A program made the translations under genes and the position numbers. This document shows, piece by piece, positions 25,328 to 57,268 of a stretch of DNA of 64,000 bases. The notes beneath the pieces are model-generated. The model did not search any database. It had not been told where the DNA came from and saw nothing but the letters and a program-made list of their open reading frames with translations. The stretch is from Dendrobates tinctorius (lineage: Eukaryota): the NCBI RefSeq assembly GCF_039654945.1, contig NW_027361674.1:3162001-3226000 (forward strand), written 5' to 3'. Each line of letters opens with the position of its first letter. Position 1 is the stretch's first letter.

Positions 25328-26609
25328 ATATTTTTTTTATTTTTAAAAATGCACAATCTTATTTTATTTTCTTACTGTTTTCTTGCAGATTGCTGCTGTT
25401 TGTTTAAAAAAAAAAAGAAAACTGCATTTCTCGTTCGCCTTATTGGGGGACACAGAGACCATGGGTGTATGCTGCTGCCACTAGGAGGCTGACACTATGC
25501 ACAAAAAAAGGTTAGCTCCTCCTCCGCAGTGTACACCCCACCGACCGGCAGGAAGTTCCTCAGTTTAGCTTAGTGTCAGTAGGAGGTGGACACGGGTCTT
25601 TGATTAGACCCATATCTACCTCGATGTGCGTCGTTTCTTTTCAGGTTTTTCCGGAGGGATACAGTGTGAATAGTCACATCTGTAGTCCCACAAAGAGACT
25701 ATGAGTACGGCGTGTACTGCCACCCCGTATCCTCATAAGTCTACAGCAGGACCAAGACCCCTAACATGGATGTGGCGTTCCAGATGGTCCTCGCTCCCCG
25801 TCTCCCACCCACTCGCCTACCAGCGGTCGGTTGAGGCGCAGGATACTCTCCTTGAAACAGTACGCTGGATGAAACGGATCAGGAGGGTAAGTATGAGACC
25901 TGAGTCCCATTCTCCCCTGCGGGTTCCACGCCAGGCCACTCCATGGATTCTTCGGCAGCGGTCGCTGTGACAGTGCTGCGACGCCTCCAGGCGGCCGCTG
26001 CAGCTATTTAGGCCCTGGCTGGTTATCGGACAGCTCTCCCCCCCCCCCTCTGCCGGGTCCTAGCTGTCCTCAGTAGCAGCCACCGCGGCGTTTCTGCGAC
26101 GCCTCCGCGCCGCCCTGTGCTGACAGGCGGCCGCCTCTTCTAATCCAGGCCCCGGCTTCATCTGGGGCCTTGTCCGGCGTCGCGGCCACGCCCCCCTTCT
26201 CCATTCTCGGGCGGGCTTCCCTCCCGCCCGCTCTAAGCCCGCCCACGGCCTTCTCCCCTCAGGTTGAGCGTCCCGGAGGCGGCGCCGTCCCTCCCACCCT
26301 ACCATCTTAGCGGGCGGCACCATTTTTATCATCGGCGCCTAGCCCCGCCTACCTCCCTCCTCTGCATCTGCAGGAAAGCGCGCGCTTCCTGCTTGGCTCC
26401 TCTCTGGCTGCCGCCATTTTCGCAGCCTGTCAGCCGGACGCTGTTCCCTCAGCCGTGCCCCTGCAAGCCGGACGAACCGTGCATCTCCATTTATTGGAAG
26501 CTGTGATAGGACACCGGACCGTGAGTAGCTCTGCATACTGCAGATTGACACCCTCCTCTGCCTCCTGTCCCCCAACCTTCCGGCAAGGCTTCAGTGACTG
26601 TCCGTCAGT

Positions 26610-28085
26610 ATGTCTAATTCTAAGTCTGACCGCACTCGTCCCCCTGCCTCCTCTGGCACCTTAGTCAAGTACTTTGCGTGCTCTTCTTGCAATCGCAAAC
26701 TTCCCTCAGGTCAGTCCACTTCCCTCTGCCTGGACTGTAGCAATCCAATCCAGTCCGACGCCGCTCAGGAGCCATCCATAGCCCCAGTGGTGAGTGAGCC
26801 CCCCATGCCGGGCTGGGCCTCCTCTCTATCACAGTCAGTGGCAGACCTCACCAAGGTGTCTCAGTCCCTAGTAGCCGTTCTGGACAAGTTGCCCTTGGGA
26901 GCTTCGGCGGGACCCAGCACGTCTCAGGACGTCCCATCTGAGCCAGCCAGCGGCAGTCGCAAGAGGCCCAGGCAGGACCTCCAGGCGGAATCCTCCCCTC
27001 GTCCTACCTCACCCCATAGTCCCCAGCAGTCTCCCTCTCGGGCCTCCTCTCCCGAGTCAGGCGAAGCGCTTTCGGAATCGGAAGGGGTCTTAGAGCTGGA
27101 TTCGGACCAGGATGCGAACATGAAGGTTACGGTGCAAAACCTCATTGCCGCGATTCACCATACCTTTGACATCGCTGACGCCCCTGCGAAATCCTCAGAT
27201 CAGGAGGTTTCGTTCAGACGGGCGGAAACACCATGCAGGGTGTTTCCCTTCCATTCTGAGTTTGGAAAGATTTTTACAAAGGAGAGAGCAGATCCGACCA
27301 GACGCTTTCAAAGAGGAAAGCGTCTCGGCGTACTGTACCCGTTTGCTAAGGAGCTCACGGACAACTGGGCCGCTTCTCCCTCGGTGGACCCTCCCGTGTC
27401 CAGACTTTCTAATAATACGGTCCTTCCGCTGTCAGGTGTGGCGTCTCTAAAAGATTCTAATGATAGGATCATAGAATCTCTAGCAAAATCTGCCTTCGAA
27501 GCGGCATCAGCAGCGGTATGTCCAGTCTTTGCTTCTTCTTGGGCAGCAAAGGCCATATCCACTTGGGCAGACGACCTTCGGCAGGGCATTCTGGATAAGG
27601 CACGACCAGAGCATTTGGCCGATATCGCCAATCAGATTTCCCATGCGGGGGATTATCTGCTTTCTGCCTCCCTGGATGCCGCATCTTGCGCAGTTCAGGC
27701 GTCAAGTAACATCGTGGCAATCCGACGTACAATTTGGCTCAAGGCCTGGCAGGCGGACTTGTCCTCTAAAAAGTCTCTGACCAATCTGCCTTTTCAGGGA
27801 GTGCGTCTCTTCGGATCACAATTGGATCAGATTATTAAGGACGCTACCGGAGGTACGAGTTCTCTTCTCCCCTCCAAGCCTCGCAGACCTCCTCCAAGGC
27901 GTCAGTTTCGTCCCTTTCGGACTTTCCGCCGTTTCAATACGGCGGAAAACCCTTCCAACCAGCAAAGGCCACAGGCACGTCAGGAAAGAAAGAAGGTTTC
28001 CTTCAGGCCCACTCCGTCCTGGCGGTCCCACTCTTCCCAGGGAAGACCGTCCAGATCTAGATCTGGACGGTCTACATCCGCATGA
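26610..28085 (+). CDS. DIRS ORF1, gag-like (491 aa)
   Basis: ATG-initiated; N-terminal CxxC-x12-CxxC; Ser/Pro-rich linker; conserved C-terminal part (AIRRTIWLKAW, LPFQGVRLFG); basic tail. Confidence 0.85.
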   Translation: MSNSKSDRTRPPASSGTLVKYFACSSCNRKLPSGQSTSLCLDCSNPIQSDAAQEPSIAPVVSEPPMPGWASSLSQSVADLTKVSQSLVAVLDKLPLGASAGPSTSQDVPSEPASGSRKRPRQDLQAESSPRPTSPHSPQQSPSRASSPESGEALSESEGVLELDSDQDANMKVTVQNLIAAIHHTFDIADAPAKSSDQEVSFRRAETPCRVFPFHSEFGKIFTKERADPTRRFQRGKRLGVLYPFAKELTDNWAASPSVDPPVSRLSNNTVLPLSGVASLKDSNDRIIESLAKSAFEAASAAVCPVFASSWAAKAISTWADDLRQGILDKARPEHLADIANQISHAGDYLLSASLDAASCAVQASSNIVAIRRTIWLKAWQADLSSKKSLTNLPFQGVRLFGSQLDQIIKDATGGTSSLLPSKPRRPPPRRQFRPFRTFRRFNTAENPSNQQRPQARQERKKVSFRPTPSWRSHSSQGRPSRSRSGRSTSA

Positions 28086-29991
28086 CTACCATCGGTCTCC
28101 CGTGGGTCCCTTCCAATTGGGAGGTCGACTTCTTTTCTTCAGCGACGTCTGGCTCGCCTCAGTAGAGGACGCTTGGGTCAGAGAGGTTGTATCAACAGGA
28201 TACAAAATAGAGTTCATTTCTCTTCCACGGGATCGCTTCTTCCAATCCCGTCCGCCGAGGGATCCGGCCTTGGTCCCGGGGTTCTGTTCGGCCATCGCCT
28301 CTCTTCTCAGTTCCGGGGTGATTGTGCCTGTTCCCGAATCGGAACGCTTCACAGGGTTTTATTCAAACCTGTTTGTGGTGCCGAAAAAGGACGGGGCAGT
28401 TTGGCCCATTTTGGATCTCAAGTTACTCAACAAGAGAGTTCGCCTTCGCCACTTCCGGATGGAGTCTGTACGCTCGGTAATTGCTTCCATGGAGGAGCAG
28501 GAATTCATGGGTTCCATAGACATCCAAGATGCCTATCTACATGTGCCCATATTTTCCGGACATCAGAAGTTCCTGCGGTTTGCGATTCACCACGAACATT
28601 ACCAGTTCGTCGCGCTTCCTTTTGGGCTCGCCACCGCTCCCAGAGTCTTCACGAAGATTATGGCGGCGTTGATGGCCTTGTTGAGAATCAGAGGTCTCGT
28701 TCTTTTTCCGTACCTCGACGATATCCTGATCAAGGCTCCCTCCTTTCAACAGGCCCGCCTAAGTGTGGCGATCGTTCTAGACACCCTGTCCAGTTTTGGG
28801 TGGATCGTCAACCGGAAAAAGTCCTGTCTGGTCCCTACTCAACGCCTTGTGTTTCTGGGCCTTCTGTTCGACACTCGTCGGTCAAGGGTATTTCTCCCAC
28901 AAGACAAGATCCTTTCCCTGCAGCAGGGCGTGCGATCATTACAGATCACACGATTTCCATCCCTCAGGACAGCCATGAGGGTCCTGGGGAAGATGGTGGC
29001 GGTGATAGAGGCAGTTCCCTTTGCCCAATTTCACGCCAGGCCACTCCAGCAGGCCATTTTGTCCAGGTGGAACAGGTCGGCTCTGTCTCTGGATCGTCCG
29101 GTTCGCCTTTCATGCCGGATCAAGCGGTCTCTCAACTGGTGGTTGACGTCTCCCCTCATTCTCTTGGGGCGGTCTTTTCTTCCCGTTCACTGGCAGATTG
29201 TCACTACGGACGCCAGCCTCATCGGCTGGGGTGCAGTGTTCCGCAATCACACTGTTCAGGGTCGATGGTCGACTCAGGAATCAGCTCTGCAGATCAATGT
29301 TCTAGAGATACGAGCGATCCATCTAGCTCTCGTCCACTGGGAAAGGCGCCTCAAGGGCCTGCCTGTCAGGATTCAGACAGACAATGCCACAGCGGTGGCG
29401 TATATCAACCGCCAAGGGGGGACACGGAGTGTCTCAGCTCTGGCGGAAGTGTCCAGAATTCTTCAATGGGCAGAGACCTTTGTTCCAACGATTTCCGCGG
29501 TTCACATTCCCGGCGTGGACAACTGGGCCGCCGATTTCCTCAGCCGCGAGGGTCTCGCGGCAGGGGAATGGTCCCTACATCCGGAGGTGTTTCATCTGCT
29601 CTGCCGTCGGTGGGGAACTCCGGATGTAGACCTCATGGCATCTCGCCTCAACAGGAAAGTCCCACAATTCGTGTCCAGGTCTCGGGACCCTCTGGCAGTG
29701 GGCGCCGACGCTCTGGCCGTCCCTTGGTCACAGTTCGAGCTCCCCTACCTGTTCCCTCCTCTGCCTCTTCTTCCCAAGTTGTTGAAGAAAATCAAAGCAG
29801 AGGGGATTCCAGTCATCCTCATCGCCCCGAATTGGCCCAGAAGGTCTTGGTTCGCGGACATTGTCAACCTTCTCGCGGACGCTCCCTGGAAGCTTCCCGA
29901 CAGGGCAGACCTGTTGTCTCAAGGCCCGATTTGCCACCCCAATTCTCGGTCGCTCAATTTAACGGCGTGGCTGTTGAGACCGAGGTTTTGA
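27781..29991 (+). CDS. DIRS RT + RNase H + adenine methyltransferase-like frame (start mechanism unknown)
   Basis: IDIQDAY, LPFGLATAP and YLDD (RT); TDAS, LE, TDN and AD (RNase H); DLMAS...YLFPP...PNWP (methyltransferase-like). The frame is open from 27781; the track start is GTG 28102; the first ATG is at 28459. Confidence 0.9.
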   Translation, partial: PICLFRECVSSDHNWIRLLRTLPEVRVLFSPPSLADLLQGVSFVPFGLSAVSIRRKTLPTSKGHRHVRKERRFPSGPLRPGGPTLPREDRPDLDLDGLHPHDYHRSPVGPFQLGGRLLFFSDVWLASVEDAWVREVVSTGYKIEFISLPRDRFFQSRPPRDPALVPGFCSAIASLLSSGVIVPVPESERFTGFYSNLFVVPKKDGAVWPILDLKLLNKRVRLRHFRMESVRSVIASMEEQEFMGSIDIQDAYLHVPIFSGHQKFLRFAIHHEHYQFVALPFGLATAPRVFTKIMAALMALLRIRGLVLFPYLDDILIKAPSFQQARLSVAIVLDTLSSFGWIVNRKKSCLVPTQRLVFLGLLFDTRRSRVFLPQDKILSLQQGVRSLQITRFPSLRTAMRVLGKMVAVIEAVPFAQFHARPLQQAILSRWNRSALSLDRPVRLSCRIKRSLNWWLTSPLILLGRSFLPVHWQIVTTDASLIGWGAVFRNHTVQGRWSTQESALQINVLEIRAIHLALVHWERRLKGLPVRIQTDNATAVAYINRQGGTRSVSALAEVSRILQWAETFVPTISAVHIPGVDNWAADFLSREGLAAGEWSLHPEVFHLLCRRWGTPDVDLMASRLNRKVPQFVSRSRDPLAVGADALAVPWSQFELPYLFPPLPLLPKLLKKIKAEGIPVILIAPNWPRRSWFADIVNLLADAPWKLPDRADLLSQGPICHPNSRSLNLTAWLLRPRF

Positions 29992-31016
29992 GACGGGCAG
30001 GATTCTCTGATCGGGTGATTCATACCATGATCCACGCCAGAAAGCCTTCTTCTTCGAAGATCTATTACCGTACTTGGAAAGCCTATTTCTCCTGGTGTGA
30101 GACCAATGACATCGCGCCCTTGGTTTTTTCGCTCCCTTCTATTCTGGCGTTTCTGCAGGCAGGGCTGGATGCGGGGCTTGCTCTCAGTTCCTTGAAGGGT
30201 CAAGTTTCGGCACTGTCCATTTTATTTCAGAAAACGCTGGCCTCCCGGCCCCAGGTCAAAACCTTCCTCCAGGGTGTGGCTCACACGGTTCCTCCGTACC
30301 GAGCGCCCGTGGATCCTTGGGATCTTAATTTGGTTCTTCAGGTTCTGCAGGGTCCTCCTTTTGAACCTCTCAGGGACGTTTCCCTTTCCCTCCTTTCTTG
30401 GAAAGTGGCCTTTCTGGTGGCCATTACCTCCATCCGGCGCGTGTCGGAATTAGCAGCACTTTCTTGCCGCTCTCCTTTTTTGGTCCTTCATCAGGACAAG
30501 GTAGTTCTGCGGCCTCCGCCCTCTTTTCTTCCGAAGGTGGTATCTTCGTTTCACCTCAATGAGGACATTGTTCTGCCATCCTTCTGCCCGAGCCCAGCTC
30601 ACCCTCGGGAGCGGTCCTTGAACAAGCTGGACCTAGTCAGGGCATTGAGAGTCTATCTAGCCCGGACGACTTCCTTGCGGAAGTCAGACTCTCTGTTCAT
30701 CATTCCTGATGGGGCGAGGAAAGGTCACCCAGCCTCAAAGGCCACTATTGCGCGCTGGATCAGATCGGCAATTTTGGAGGCATACCGGGTCAAGCATCGA
30801 GTGGCCCCTCCAGGGATCAGAGCGCACTCTACCCGAGCGGTGGGTGCCTCCTGGGCGGTGCGCCACAGAGCTTCCGCGCTGCAGCTTTGCAAGGCTGCAA
30901 CGTGGTCATCGGTTCACACCTTTGTGAAATTCTACAGGGTCCACACCTACGCTTCGGCGGACGCCAGCCTAGGTAGAAGGATTCTGCAGGCTGCGGTGGC
31001 GAGTCCACTGGCCTGA
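28086..31016 (+). CDS. DIRS tyrosine recombinase frame (recombinase domain about 29950-31016)
   Basis: Catalytic R (IRRVSEL), HxxR (AHSTR), W (ATW) and Y (KFYR). The frame is open from immediately after the gag stop; the track start is TTG 28173. Confidence 0.9.
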   Translation, partial: LPSVSRGSLPIGRSTSFLQRRLARLSRGRLGQRGCINRIQNRVHFSSTGSLLPIPSAEGSGLGPGVLFGHRLSSQFRGDCACSRIGTLHRVLFKPVCGAEKGRGSLAHFGSQVTQQESSPSPLPDGVCTLGNCFHGGAGIHGFHRHPRCLSTCAHIFRTSEVPAVCDSPRTLPVRRASFWARHRSQSLHEDYGGVDGLVENQRSRSFSVPRRYPDQGSLLSTGPPKCGDRSRHPVQFWVDRQPEKVLSGPYSTPCVSGPSVRHSSVKGISPTRQDPFPAAGRAIITDHTISIPQDSHEGPGEDGGGDRGSSLCPISRQATPAGHFVQVEQVGSVSGSSGSPFMPDQAVSQLVVDVSPHSLGAVFSSRSLADCHYGRQPHRLGCSVPQSHCSGSMVDSGISSADQCSRDTSDPSSSRPLGKAPQGPACQDSDRQCHSGGVYQPPRGDTECLSSGGSVQNSSMGRDLCSNDFRGSHSRRGQLGRRFPQPRGSRGRGMVPTSGGVSSALPSVGNSGCRPHGISPQQESPTIRVQVSGPSGSGRRRSGRPLVTVRAPLPVPSSASSSQVVEENQSRGDSSHPHRPELAQKVLVRGHCQPSRGRSLEASRQGRPVVSRPDLPPQFSVAQFNGVAVETEVLRRAGFSDRVIHTMIHARKPSSSKIYYRTWKAYFSWCETNDIAPLVFSLPSILAFLQAGLDAGLALSSLKGQVSALSILFQKTLASRPQVKTFLQGVAHTVPPYRAPVDPWDLNLVLQVLQGPPFEPLRDVSLSLLSWKVAFLVAITSIRRVSELAALSCRSPFLVLHQDKVVLRPPPSFLPKVVSSFHLNEDIVLPSFCPSPAHPRERSLNKLDLVRALRVYLARTTSLRKSDSLFIIPDGARKGHPASKATIARWIRSAILEAYRVKHRVAPPGIRAHSTRAVGASWAVRHRASALQLCKAATWSSVHTFVKFYRVHTYASADASLGRRILQAAVASPLA

Positions 31017-31056
31017 TGGAAGTTTGTTTCCCACCCCAGGGACTGCTTTGGGACGT

Positions 31057-31158
31057 CCCATGGTCTCTGTGTCCCCCAATAAGGCGAACGAGAAAACAGG
31101 ATTTTTTGGGTTGCTTACCGTAAAATCTGTTTCTCGGAGCCTTCATTGGGGGACACAG
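31057..31158. repeat. DIRS internal complementary region (ICR)
   Basis: Reverse complement of the joined right and left termini: ...AATAAGGCGAACGAGAAA-ACAGGATTTTTTGGGTTGCTTACCG... Confidence 0.92.
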
Positions 31159-31902
31159 CACCCTCCCATGTTCTACAACTCCTGTTCTTATGTTTGTTGG
31201 TTTGTTACAGTTGAGTTGTTTGTTCTGTTTTCAATCTATTCTGTTACTTCTCCTACTGCTTTCTCACTAACTGAGGAACTTCCGGTCGGTGGGGTGTACA
31301 CTGCGGAGGAGGAGCTAACCTTTTTTTGTGCATAGTGTCAGCGTCCTAGTGGCAGCAGCATACACCCATGGTCTCTGTGTCCCCCAATGAAGGCTCCGAG
31401 AAACAGATTTTACGGTAAGCAACCCAAAAAATCCTGTTTTTTCTGTTGTTACCCTGGTCCAGAGCCGAGTCTTTGCCACTGCCCAGTGTCTCTGAAGCAC
31501 TGACGTCTCATCGACAGCGCTGCAGCCAATCACTGAGCTCAGCAGTTCTGAAAATGTAGACGCCACGAGCCTCAGAGCGCATTGGTTGGCTGCAGTGCTG
31601 TCAACGTGATGTCGGTTCTGCAGATGACAACAGACTCCATCAGCAGTGTTGGAGACTCAGTGCTGGACTTGAAGAGGTGAGTAAAGCACAATTTGTTTTT
31701 TGTATTTTTAAACAAAATGCAGCCAGGAGATAGGTTATCTGAAGATGGAAAACCCCTTTAAGGGCCTTCAGAATAATGCACAAAAAGTATGATTGCACGT
31801 TAAACCTTCAAAGACTGTGGAGCTATGAGGCAAGATATTAGTGAAATTGTGAACAGAGATGATAAGGGCTGATCAGTCGTGCATGGTATATGCATTTGGT
31901 TT

Positions 31903-32275
31903 TATCAAACCAGGAAAGGTATCCAGCAACAGATCCATCGGTGAATAGTTATTAAAAAACAAAAATCTTTCATGTATAACATGGTTAAAATTCTGGTATA
32001 ATACCATTAGTTTAGAAAAAGGCAAGTAACCCGGGAAACTCATGGCCTTACGCGTTTCAAACCAACTGGTTCTTAATCATAGTTCACACTTTGAACTATG
32101 ATTAAAAACCTGTTGGTTTGAAACGCGTAAGGCCATGAGTTTCCCGGGTTACTTGCCTTTTTCTAACCTAATGGTATTATACCAGAATTTTAACCATGTT
32201 ATACATTAAAGATTTTTGTTTTTAAATAACTATTCACTGATGGATCTGTTGCTGGATACCTTTCCTTCTTTGATA
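31903..32275. repeat. Near-perfect palindrome of about 370 bp (Penelope-like fold-back)
   Basis: Arms of about 184 bp around a 5-nt loop at 32087-32091; each arm carries GAAACGCGT. Confidence 0.9.
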
Positions 32276-56148: not shown

Positions 56149-57268
56149 CCCCTTAGTGACGGGGCCAATTTTTTAAATTCTGACCAGTGTCACTTTATGG
56201 CAGTAACTCTGGAATTCTTCAACATATCCCAGTGATTTTGAGATTGTTTTTTCGTAGCACATTATAATTTATGATAATGGTAAATTTAGGTTGATATGGT
56301 TTTGTGTTTATTCATAAAAAAAAATATCAAACTTGACAAATGTAAAAAATTGCAATTTTCCCGTCTCCCATGACAGCACACATGAGTATAAAGGTGCCGT
56401 CATGGGCTCTGCAATACCGGCTACTGGTAAGTAACCTTAGTGTTTTCCTGTCTCCCATGACGGCACCTGTATACTCATGTGTGCCGTCATGGGCTCCGGA
56501 AAAACCAGCTACCGGTAAGTAACCTTGGTGTTTTCAAACTTTGAATGATTATCCCTTTAATCCAGATAGTCGTACTACAGAAAAACATTAATAAGTAACA
56601 TTTCCCACATGTCTGCCTTACATCAGCACCATTTTTAAAATGCTAACTTATTTTGTTAGCCTTTTAGGAGGTTTAAAAATGTAGCAATAATTTTTCATTT
56701 TTTCAAGGAAATTTACAAAAAAATTTGAGTGACCTATCCCAGTTTGAAGTGACTTTAGGGGTCCTATATATTGGAAAACCCCAAAAGTGATACCATTTTT
56801 AAAAACAGCACCCCCTGACATATTAAAAACTGCTGTCAGGTAGTTTATTAACCCTTCAGGTGATTTTCAGGAATTAATGCAAAGTGGCATAGCAGGAATG
56901 AAAGTGTTTGTTTACCACCTAAATGTCGCTAACTTCTGAACTGACCACTATATTCGGGAGACTCTAATGCCGCTATTTGGCCATGAACTGCCATAGCAAA
57001 CATCAGGACCACACTATCATGCTCTGTGTTTTCAATTAGATTAATGCGAAAGCTGCCACAATCTATTAACCATTTATTTGATGTGGTCACTTTTGACAGC
57101 AGCAAATAAGGGGTTAAACAGATATGGATGGTGCCAACACCAATCGTTTGTGATACAGCAAGTTGTCAGCTATAGTGTACAGCCCACAGCTGCTGGATTG
57201 TCACCTGTATGGGGATTAAATTCTCTATCTCAGGTCAGTAAAAAGACGTATTGGCTGTCATTAAGGGG
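56149..57268. mobile_element. Nested piggyBac-like MITE
   Basis: TGAA|CCCCTTAGTGAC ... GTCATTAAGGGG|TTAA. Confidence 0.65.
56356..56535 (+). repeat. Tandem dimer of an 87-88 bp hairpin unit with DIRS-like ends
   Basis: Units 56356-56442 and 56443-56530, each bounded by TTTTC. Confidence 0.7.

What the first reader, a model, noticed from the sequence alone, without database searches (positions are those of the whole stretch)
28083..28128. Candidate programmed stop-codon readthrough (UGA-CUA plus stem-loop) joining DIRS gag to the tyrosine recombinase
Seen: gag (from 26610) and the recombinase frame are the same reading frame, separated only by TGA at 28083-28085. The context is GCA-TGA-CTA. 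Six nt after the stop, TCGGTCTCCC (28092-28101) can pair with GGGAGGTCGA (28119-28128), giving 10 bp with two G-U pairs. The frame then runs 342 codons with no stop and no ATG (first ATG 29112) and ends at 31016. Established: UGA-CUA with a 3' stem-loop is the readthrough signal type of alphaviruses and some cellular genes. Inference: readthrough would give a 1468-aa Gag-linker-recombinase protein at a low ratio to Gag. That would explain why the frame stays open across the whole RT gene and could package the recombinase into particles. I do not know of an experimental demonstration in vertebrate DIRS elements; the literature should be checked.
Basis: partly seen in the sequence, partly recalled or inferred. 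Interest (0 to 1): 0.8.

Follow-up and report, generated by a model that had tools for sequence, protein, structure and literature searches.

The report
Leaky gag stop feeding DIRS recombinase
In this frog DIRS1-type retrotransposon, and in dozens of distant relatives, the gag gene and the tyrosine recombinase share one reading frame broken by a single leaky-type stop codon, so the recombinase is probably made by ribosomes that read through that stop and cross the polymerase gene in a stop-free alternative frame.

Summary
The sequence facts hold. gag (26610-28085) ends at TGA 28083-28085 in the context GCA-TGA-CTA. The same frame then runs 976 codons to 31016, with no ATG for 342 codons. It overprints RT/RNaseH/MT, which lies in the +1 frame, and ends in the recombinase.

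The open frame is not chance: it has 0 stops against about 23 expected from synonymous shuffles.

The architecture is widely conserved. Of 72 distinct DIRS1-like loci with intact pol, 41 have gag, one stop, a stop-free frame of about 2 kb and the recombinase; four more are cut off by contig ends. The stop is TGA (34) or TAG (7), never TAA. TGA-CT follows in 16 of 45. No start codon is conserved downstream.

It scores z = -0.87 and is not conserved among frog relatives. Lineage-specific hairpins after the stop are modestly enriched.

New here: UUU_CGN, the influenza PA-X type +1 frameshift motif, sits in the gag/pol overlap in 22 of 45 loci, including this window (27906-27920). It probably makes Gag-Pol and leaves the stop for readthrough.

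Readthrough is well supported comparatively but untested experimentally. The scan flagged the same arrangement on two other pieces of this genome.

The parts
25427..25551 (+). Left inverted terminal repeat of the DIRS1-like element
   Evidence: 125-nt arm, 94% complementary to 31279-31403.
26610..28085 (+). gag ORF, 491 aa, frame 0, ending in TGA
   Evidence: ORF list and translation. Pfam LAP2alpha hit, E = 1.2e-12, the domain reported for DIRS ORF1 in Xenopus (PMC9210276).
27903..27921 (+). Candidate +1 frameshift sites CAG_UUU_CGU_C and CCC_UUU_CGG_A in the gag frame (UUU at 27906-27908 and 27915-27917). They would take ribosomes from gag into the pol frame.
   Evidence: Sequence read. UUU_CGN lies in the gag/pol overlap zone in 22 of 45 related loci. 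31 of 46 Phe-Arg pairs there are coded TTT_CGN against 35% expected, p = 7e-6. The motif is the one established for influenza PA-X (PMC5009743).
27781..29991 (+). pol reading frame (RT, RNase H, methyltransferase-like region), +1 relative to gag. Conserved sequence starts near 28102. There is no ATG near its start.
   Evidence: Translation. Pfam RVT_1 E = 2e-17 and RT_RNaseH E = 9.8e-5. Frame limits.
28083..28085 (+). gag stop codon TGA, the proposed readthrough site
   Evidence: It is the only stop between the gag start and 31014 in this frame.
28086..28088 (+). CTA triplet after the stop, giving UGA-CUA
   Evidence: UGA CUA is the consensus for high basal readthrough in human cells (PMC4359377) and occurs at alphavirus readthrough sites (PMC13517186).
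28092..28128 (+). The 3' arm is the codons for the conserved pol motif G-G-R.
   Evidence: It folds but z = -0.87. It is not conserved in an alignment of 8 frog and caecilian junctions. Its own arm pairing is no better than pairing with arms from other loci.
28086..29990 (+). Stop-free overprinted stretch of about 634 codons in the gag frame, overlapping pol in its -1 frame ('X'). It is rich in G, S, R and P and poorly conserved as protein.
   Evidence: G+S+R+P 48%, hydrophobic residues 21%. X identity 0.27-0.47 where pol identity is 0.51-0.77.
29991..31016 (+). Tyrosine recombinase region, the non-overlapping 3' part of the gag-frame ORF
   Evidence: tblastn matches at 38-81% identity to the region downstream of pol in related loci. 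Pfam itself gave no hit at E < 0.01.
31057..31158 (+). Internal complementary region (left and right parts)
   Evidence: 31057-31095 is 100% complementary to 25427-25465. 31090-31158 is 99% complementary to 31375-31443.
31279..31443 (+). Right inverted terminal repeat plus right extension
   Evidence: pairs I2 and I3.

Best explanation
The window holds an intact DIRS1-like retrotransposon at about 25427-31443.

Proposed mechanism (inferred):
- Most ribosomes translating its genomic RNA stop at the gag UGA (28083) and make Gag.
- A small fraction decode the UGA, helped by the UGA-CUA context. They continue in the same frame through a stop-free stretch of about 634 codons that overprints pol, then translate the tyrosine recombinase. 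The product would be a Gag-spacer-recombinase protein of 1468 aa.
- Pol itself has no start codon. It is probably reached by a +1 frameshift at UUU_CGN (27906-27920), about 170 nt upstream of the gag stop.

Shown here: the frame layout, selection against stops in the overprinted frame, the bias in stop identity and context, and wide conservation of all of these.

Not shown: that readthrough and frameshifting actually occur, their rates, and what the fusion protein does.
For: - gag and the recombinase share a frame, with one stop between them, in the window.
- In 70 of 71 loci with pol and YR, YR lies in the pol -1 frame. In 55 of 71 its ORF spans the whole of pol.
- Of 72 distinct loci with intact pol, 41 have gag, a single stop, a long stop-free frame and YR. 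Four more have the same layout, with the frame open for 629-747 codons up to the contig end.
- On the pol tree this layout fills the major clade. Terminal branches have a median length of 0.56 substitutions per site.
- The overprinted frame has 0 stops against 13-37 expected in all 18 long-overlap loci tested. The other alternative frame matches expectation.
- Four-fold degenerate sites are near saturation between lineages, so stop avoidance is still being maintained.
- The gag stop is TGA in 34 loci, TAG in 7 and TAA in 0. The pol and YR stops of the same loci are TAA in 13 of 75 (Fisher p = 0.004).
- The base after the stop is C in 21, G in 12, T in 5 and A in 3 loci.
- 'TGA CT' occurs in 16 of 45 loci.
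- The first ATG after the stop falls anywhere from codon 14 to codon 542, so no start codon is conserved. About half the loci also lack an ATG at the start of pol.
- Predicted folding is strongest in the 90 nt right after the stop: mean z = -1.56 there against -0.4 to -1.2 at the other 20 scan positions.
- No pol-frame -1 slippery site is conserved.
- No consistent splice joint links gag to YR in the laid contigs.
- UGA CUA gives 0.6-2.3% readthrough in human cell reporters without any RNA structure (PMC4359377).
Against: - There is no experimental evidence for readthrough in any DIRS element. None was found in the searched literature.
- The CUA triplet and the stem-loop are not conserved among the nearest relatives.
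- A few loci have gag in another frame relative to pol and YR: L009, L071 and L084 have gag in the pol frame, and L006 has it in the third frame. If these are functional, the way into the recombinase frame is not always readthrough. A frame-independent mechanism then becomes harder to exclude.
- One reptile copy (L004) has 8 stops early in the overprinted frame.
- The counts are not corrected for shared ancestry.
Confidence: 0.6

Rival explanations
1. The recombinase frame is entered from pol, not from gag. Ribosomes already translating Gag-Pol slip -1, either at a specific site or anywhere along pol, and the stop-free frame simply catches them. The shared gag and recombinase frame would then be a by-product of gag-to-pol being +1 and pol-to-YR being -1.
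For: YR lies in the pol -1 frame in 70 of 71 loci. Poulter and Butler (2015, as quoted in PMC13003380) proposed -1 frameshifting for the short pol/YR overlap of Ngaro elements. A basal clade here has short overlaps only.
Against: No pol-frame slippery heptamer is conserved in position, and nine loci have none at all. A specific site late in pol would not require the frame to be open from the gag stop onward, yet it is open there in nearly all members of the major clade. This reading does not explain the TGA/TAG-only bias or the CU context at the gag stop.
Confidence: 0.12
2. The recombinase ORF, and perhaps pol, is translated independently of gag decoding. The route could be internal or non-AUG initiation, termination-reinitiation near the gag stop, or a spliced or subgenomic RNA.
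For: gag occupies all three possible frames relative to pol and YR in different loci, as expected if the gag frame did not matter. Neither ORF has a conserved AUG, so some non-standard route is needed anyway.
Against: Several of the odd-frame loci sit next to ordinary copies on the tree and look like indel-damaged copies: L065 next to L055, L019 next to L028, and L035 next to L064. Scanning or reinitiating subunits would select against AUGs, not against stops in one frame over 2 kb. No AUG lies near the stop in frame. The conserved 'GCATGA' puts an ATG in the unused third frame. No recurrent splice joint was seen, although the laid data were contigs only.
Confidence: 0.1
3. The stop codon and any downstream hairpin mainly serve a +1 frameshift into pol at the stop itself, as in antizyme (UCC_UGA_U). 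Readthrough would be incidental.
For: pol lies +1 to gag and starts 16-170 nt after the stop. The last sense codon is UCC in six loci (five TCC-TGA, one TCC-TAG) and GCA in most frog copies. Structure is enriched just after the stop.
Against: The last sense codon is not conserved overall. A better +1 candidate, UUU_CGN, lies upstream in half of the loci, including this window. This reading does not explain 2 kb of stop avoidance in frame 0.
Confidence: 0.08
4. The open frame and its junction with gag have no translational role. They would be a side effect of base composition or codon-pair bias.
For: The window's pol is 55% G+C. The openness of the pol frame upstream of the gag stop is indeed explained by gag amino-acid composition alone.
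Against: There are 0 stops against 13-37 expected, in one alternative frame only, in 18 of 18 lineages spanning 43-62% G+C. Related elements without the long overlap have 30-66 stops in that frame.
Confidence: 0.03

Closest known systems
Gammaretrovirus (Moloney MLV) gag-pol stop-codon readthrough
   Same: It is a retroelement gag terminated by one leaky stop, with an in-frame downstream enzyme ORF and a low ratio of fusion protein to Gag. In MLV the stop is followed by GGA/GGG, and a G-run that encodes Gly-Gly forms one arm of the stimulatory structure (PMC13517186). Several DIRS lineages likewise have TAG-GGA or TAG-GGG, with hairpins whose 3' arm is the G-G-R codons.
   Different: Here readthrough would lead to the recombinase, not to pol, after about 634 codons of an overprinted frame with no conserved protein sequence. 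No pseudoknot is defined. The window uses UGA-CUA, not UAG-G. Nothing has been tested experimentally.
Alphavirus and cellular type II readthrough sites (UGA-CUA or UGA-CGG, with or without an extended 3' stem-loop)
   Same: The hexamer is the same as in Sindbis and O'nyong-nyong viruses (UGA CUA) and in human LDHB, AQP4 and MDH1-type sites (PMC13517186, PMC4359377). UGA-CU recurs in 16 of 45 DIRS loci.
   Different: The alphavirus stems start at about +12 to +16 and are long, conserved structures. The window's stem starts at +10, is 10 bp long, is not above chance and is not conserved.
DIRS1-like 'long ORF overlap' (Piednoel et al. 2011; Goodwin and Poulter 2001)
   Same: It is the same feature. 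A YR ORF overlapping all of pol is reported in half of 28 annotated elements, including XtDIRS2, XtDIRS3, TnDIRS1a and AcDIRS2, with the catalytic domain in the non-overlapping 3' end (PMC3266345).
   Different: Those descriptions give no expression mechanism. In the texts I could read they do not mention the shared frame with gag, the single leaky stop or selection against stops.
Influenza A PA-X and amalgavirus +1 frameshifting at UCC_UUU_CGU / UUU_CGN
   Same: The motif is the same and sits in the zero frame, with the +1 frame open across it. The exact UCC_UUU_CGU occurs in five relatives (L002, L005, L031, L076, L091). The window has CAG_UUU_CGU and CCC_UUU_CGG (PMC5009743).
   Different: It is found in only 22 of 45 loci. 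In influenza the efficiency is about 1%, and whether that would supply enough Pol is unknown. It is untested here.

Membership tests
DIRS1-like retrotransposon (order DIRS) | Inverted terminal repeats plus an internal complementary region that matches both termini | tested here: met
   ITR arms 25427-25551 and 31279-31403. 31057-31095 is complementary to the left end, and 31090-31158 to 31375-31443.
DIRS1-like retrotransposon (order DIRS) | gag-like ORF, RT/RNase H(/MT) ORF and tyrosine recombinase ORF, with no protease and no DDE integrase | tested here: met
   Pfam LAP2alpha in gag, and RVT_1 and RT_RNaseH in pol. The YR region matches the region downstream of pol in relatives. The pol tree places the window among frog DIRS1-like copies. 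The absence of protease and integrase rests only on the lack of Pfam hits.
DIRS1-like retrotransposon (order DIRS) | Long overlap of the YR ORF with pol (present in a subset of the family) | tested here: met
   The overlap is 1903 nt in the window. The feature is described in PMC3266345.
Programmed stop-codon readthrough, type II (UGA-CUA/CGG) | UGA followed by CUA or CGG | tested here: met
   TGA CTA at 28083-28088. Among relatives the triplet varies, although TGA-CT occurs in 16 of 45.
Programmed stop-codon readthrough, type II (UGA-CUA/CGG) | An in-frame downstream ORF kept open by selection across relatives, with the stop itself retained | tested here: met
   One locus (L013) has no stop at the junction.
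Programmed stop-codon readthrough, type II (UGA-CUA/CGG) | A conserved 3' stimulatory RNA structure about 8 nt or more after the stop | tested here: inconclusive
   The window stem scores z = -0.87, is not conserved, and its own-versus-cross pairing rank is 16 of 34. At family level the z-score minimum lies just after the stop, and own-arm pairing beats cross pairing with p = 0.014.
Programmed stop-codon readthrough, type II (UGA-CUA/CGG) | A readthrough product demonstrated by reporter assay, ribosome profiling or peptides | not testable with these tools
   Only assembled contigs of public runs were available.
+1 programmed frameshifting of the PA-X type | UUU_CGN, ideally UCC_UUU_CGU, in the zero frame with the +1 frame open across it | tested here: met
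   The motifs lie at 27903-27921, and the pol frame is open from 27781. Enrichment p = 7e-6.
+1 programmed frameshifting of the PA-X type | The motif is conserved in all relatives that need the shift | tested here: not met
   23 of 45 loci lack UUU_CGN and show no common alternative.
Selenocysteine recoding of UGA | UGA only, plus a SECIS element | tested here: not met
   Seven lineages use TAG at the same position. Rfam found no match near the site; the 3' UTR was not scanned.

The most novel reading that the evidence does not exclude
One gag ORF feeds two different recoding events across a whole clade of DIRS1-like elements. A +1 frameshift at UUU_CGN makes Gag-Pol. Readthrough of the next stop makes Gag-spacer-recombinase. 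The spacer is a 600-700-codon overprinted frame with no detected constraint other than containing no stop. It acts as a translational conduit beneath pol and sets the recombinase dose.
Probability: 0.4. Interest if true: 0.85.

Novelty: new variant of a known kind. Interest (0 to 1): 0.7.

Why it matters
How DIRS elements express their recombinase and polymerase has been open since the overlapping ORFs were first described. The overlap is noted in every review but, in the papers I could read, never explained.

A conserved layout of leaky stop plus stop-free conduit gives a concrete, testable mechanism. It sets Gag, Pol and recombinase at different doses from a single RNA.

It would add a retroelement order to the list of readthrough users. 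It would also be an unusual case of about 2 kb of overprinted sequence kept under selection only to stay open.

In practice it tells annotators to expect a single in-frame stop between gag and YR in intact copies. This matters in amphibian and fish genomes, where these elements are abundant and are often merged into host gene models.

Tried and rejected
Single-sequence folding, RNAalifold on 8 relatives and an own-versus-cross arm pairing test all failed to support it.
- **pol ORF extended upstream of the gag stop by selection: rejected.** Synonymous shuffles reproduce the openness, so gag's amino-acid composition explains it.
- **Protein-level constraint on the overprinted frame: not detected.** Four-fold sites are saturated in every available pair, so the test has little power.
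- **Conserved -1 slippery site from pol into the recombinase frame: none found**.
- **Rfam scan of 27800-28500:** only sub-threshold hits on the minus strand.
- **Public reads:** only Logan contigs were available. They show a high-copy family and no recurrent joint from gag to YR. They cannot show translation, and the variant list shown was truncated.
- **Literature:** eight searches and ten papers read gave no statement on readthrough or frameshifting in DIRS1-like elements. Two key papers could not be fetched by DOI, and a third, Poulter and Goodwin 2005, was not read.
- **Supplements:** none are held for the Xenopus survey. Those of Piednoel 2011 were listed but not read.
- **X. laevis locus L003:** too decayed to use.
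- **Not attempted:** Complex prediction, structure prediction and the large representative protein search, because they would not bear on a translational mechanism.
- **Operators' rule:** Only natural copies were compared.
Full report
**The observation**

The window carries a complete DIRS1-like retrotransposon.
- Inverted terminal repeats lie at 25427-25551 and 31279-31403.
- An internal complementary region at 31057-31158 matches both termini.
- gag is an ATG ORF at 26610-28085 of 491 aa, with a Pfam LAP2alpha match.
- Its stop is TGA at 28083-28085, in the context GCA-TGA-CTA.
- The same frame continues without a stop to 31014-31016, which is 976 codons. The first ATG is at codon 342, position 29112.
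- RT/RNase H/MT lies in the +1 frame. That frame is open from 27781 to 29991 and has no ATG, GTG or TTG before 28102.
- Sequence similar to the recombinase region of relatives begins at 29991, exactly where pol ends.

**Is it more than chance?**

For the open frame, yes. I shuffled synonymous codons of pol while keeping its protein and codon usage. The gag frame then carries a mean of 23 stops, with a minimum of 14 in 300 shuffles. The real sequence has none. The other alternative frame has 20 stops against 20.6 expected.

For the stem-loop, no. It is part of the minimum-free-energy fold (-17.5 kcal/mol), but z is -0.87 and 40 of 200 shuffles fold at least as well.

**Relatives**

A word-based protein search with pol found hundreds of relatives, the closest in dendrobatid and other frogs.

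I fetched DNA from three sources:
- annotated genomes of Ranitomeya, Pseudophryne, Xenopus, the caecilian Rhinatrema, the amphisbaenian Rhineura and a catfish;
- frog-like Logan and ENA contigs;
- 80 metagenome contigs carrying DIRS1-like pol at 33-41% identity.

**Frame layout across relatives**

- In 70 of 71 loci with both pol and YR, YR lies in the pol -1 frame.
- In 55 of 71 the YR-frame ORF overlaps pol by 1800 nt or more.
- In most of those 55 the stop that bounds the ORF upstream lies 7-170 nt before the conserved start of pol. In a few it lies further upstream.
- After removing near-duplicates, 72 loci with intact pol remain. In 41 of them that bounding stop ends a long same-frame ORF of 190-1125 codons, which is gag.
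- Four more loci show the same layout but lose YR at the contig end. Their frame stays open for 629-747 codons up to that end.
- On a pol tree this layout fills the major clade of 61 rows. Median terminal branch length is 0.56 substitutions per site.
- All 18 long-overlap loci tested have 0 stops in that frame against 13-37 expected. Three elements of the short-overlap type have 30-66 stops.
- Four-fold degenerate sites are near saturation between lineages (0.5-0.75). Translated identity of the overprinted frame is 0.27-0.47 where pol identity is 0.51-0.77.
- The window's overprinted stretch is 48% G+S+R+P.

So the stretch behaves as a spacer. Being stop-free is the only constraint detected, and that constraint is still being enforced.

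**The stop and its context**

- In the 41 loci the gag stop is TGA in 34, TAG in 7 and TAA in none.
- The pol and YR stops of the same loci are TAA in 13 of 75 cases (Fisher p = 0.004, not corrected for phylogeny).
- The next base is C in 21, G in 12, T in 5 and A in 3 loci.
- With the four truncated loci added, 'TGA CT' occurs in 16 of 45. TGA-CTA itself is found in the window, L017, L031, L038/L044 and L076.
- TAG lineages often have GGA or GGG next, as in murine leukaemia virus (PMC13517186).
- UGA CUA is the consensus for high basal readthrough in human cells, at 0.6-2.3% in reporters (PMC4359377). It also occurs at Sindbis and O'nyong-nyong readthrough sites (PMC13517186).
- Among the window's nearest relatives 'GCA TGA' is kept in six of eight. 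The following triplet varies: CTA, CTC, CGT, TGT, AGG, TGG.

**Start codons**

The first ATG after the stop lies anywhere from codon 14 to codon 542. About half of the loci also have no ATG at the start of the pol frame. Neither downstream ORF therefore has a conserved start of its own.

**RNA structure**

- Many lineages do have a hairpin that starts 6-10 nt after the stop. Its 3' arm is the G-rich codons of the conserved pol motif V-G-G-R-L, and its 5' arm differs from lineage to lineage.
- A scan with 90-nt windows gives its lowest mean z directly after the stop: -1.56, against -0.4 to -1.2 at the other 20 scan positions.
- I paired each upstream segment with its own 3' arm and with the arms of other loci. 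The own arm is favoured on average, -18.4 against -15.9 kcal/mol (Wilcoxon p = 0.014). The window's own value equals the cross average, at rank 16 of 34.

Structure after the stop is therefore a modest, lineage-specific trend. It is not established for this copy.

**How pol is reached**

- pol is +1 to gag.
- The openness of the pol frame upstream of the gag stop is explained by gag's amino-acid composition, so it does not locate a shift site.
- The motif UUU_CGN, in the gag frame, lies inside the gag/pol overlap zone in 22 of 45 loci.
- The exact influenza PA-X cassette UCC_UUU_CGU occurs in L002 (twice), L005, L031, L076 and L091.
- The window has CAG_UUU_CGU_C and CCC_UUU_CGG_A at 27903-27921.
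- Phe-Arg pairs are 46 in 4042 codons in the overlap zone, against 36 in 20,619 codons elsewhere in gag.
- In the zone 31 of 46 pairs are coded TTT_CGN, against 35% expected from local codon usage (p = 7e-6).
- UCC_UUU_CGU is the established minimal +1 frameshift cassette of influenza A. It has been used to find shift sites in other viruses (PMC5009743).
- The remaining 23 loci show no common alternative motif.

If pol is reached upstream in this way, the peculiar properties of the gag stop are left to be explained by readthrough.

**Exceptions**

- L009, L071 and L084 have gag in frame with pol, separated by one TAG-G, TGA-C or TAG-C stop. Their recombinase ORF opens 37-214 nt upstream of that stop, in the -1 frame.
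- L009 has A_AAA_AAC three nucleotides after that opening.
- L006 (catfish) uses all three frames.
- L065, L019 and L035 sit next to ordinary copies on the tree and are probably indel-damaged.
- L013 has no stop at the junction, giving one ORF of 1626 codons.
- L004 (Rhineura) has eight stops in the first 650 nt after gag.
- A basal clade has only short pol/YR overlaps.

In every long-overlap layout the recombinase ORF begins at the end of gag. This fits entry by ribosomes coming from gag, using whichever recoding event the frames require. It also keeps a frame-independent mechanism from being excluded.

**Expression data**

Public runs of the same organism hold the element only as assembled contigs. 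They show a very high-copy family; in run X1, for example, 429 of 1971 laid pieces are at least 99% alike. No recurrent joint links gag to YR. They cannot show translation.

**Literature**

- The long overlap of the YR and pol ORFs is known. It was reported in half of 28 annotated elements, with the catalytic domain in the non-overlapping 3' end (PMC3266345). It is repeated in later surveys (PMC9210276, PMC6681497, PMC5633606).
- For Ngaro elements, -1 frameshifting in the short overlap has been suggested (quoted in PMC13003380).
- I found no statement that gag and YR share a frame across a single stop, and none on readthrough or on UUU_CGN in DIRS elements.
- The held part of the large 2016 review of frameshifting does not mention DIRS.
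- Three primary sources were not read, two of them because they could not be fetched by DOI. Priority is therefore uncertain.
- Two other first-stage notes on other pieces of this genome report the same arrangement, one with UGA-CUA and one with UGA-CG. I did not check them.

**Verdict**

Its main inference, readthrough of the gag stop into the recombinase frame, is the best-supported explanation. I give it 0.6. The named stem-loop should be dropped as evidence. The CUA context is favourable but is not a conserved requirement.

The added finding of a PA-X-type +1 motif for pol gives a testable three-product model: Gag, Gag-Pol and Gag-spacer-recombinase.

Noticed in passing
window 31903-32275: A 184-nt inverted repeat with arms 96% complementary and only 5 nt between them lies about 460 nt downstream of the element. 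It may be related to the mini-DIRS-like hairpin noted by the first stage at 56356-56535.
   Followed up: no
window 28047-28070: A perfect 24-nt palindrome (CCGTCCAGATCT/AGATCTGGACGG) lies inside the last gag codons and ends 12 nt before the stop. It is not present in the closest relative, L001.
   Followed up: partly
L009:2167-2272: This locus has a different frame layout. gag is in frame with pol across a single TAG-G stop. The long recombinase ORF opens in the -1 frame 103 nt upstream, with the classic slippery heptamer A_AAA_AAC three nucleotides after the opening.
   Followed up: partly
L013:1446-6326: gag, the overprinted stretch and the recombinase form one uninterrupted ORF of 1626 codons with no stop at the junction. 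This recalls alphavirus strains that carry a sense codon at the readthrough site, or it may be a single mutated copy.
   Followed up: partly
L088:3919, L089:3902, L090:3919: Three contigs from three different sequencing runs share the same TAG inside the start of the recombinase region, followed by an ATG-initiated ORF of 294 aa. This may be a transcribed variant family in which the recombinase is uncoupled from the long frame.
   Followed up: no
L004:4617-5264: The Rhineura (amphisbaenian) copy keeps the same frame relations. It ends gag with TAG and has seven further stops in the first 650 nt of the overprinted frame, which is then open for 758 codons.
   Followed up: partly
hits (e.g. P0009, P0025, P0032, P0047): Many NCBI gene models in frog genomes fuse DIRS pol or gag sequence to host genes or carry host gene names. 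Examples are 'sex comb on midleg-like protein 2', 'ELMO domain-containing protein 3' and 'WASH complex subunit 5'. This suggests transposon sequence has been merged into the annotations.
   Followed up: no
window 28080-28085 and the frog loci: The hexamer GCATGA (Ala-stop) is kept in six of eight frog and caecilian families although the gag tails are otherwise unalignable. The ATG it contains is in the unused third frame.
   Followed up: partly
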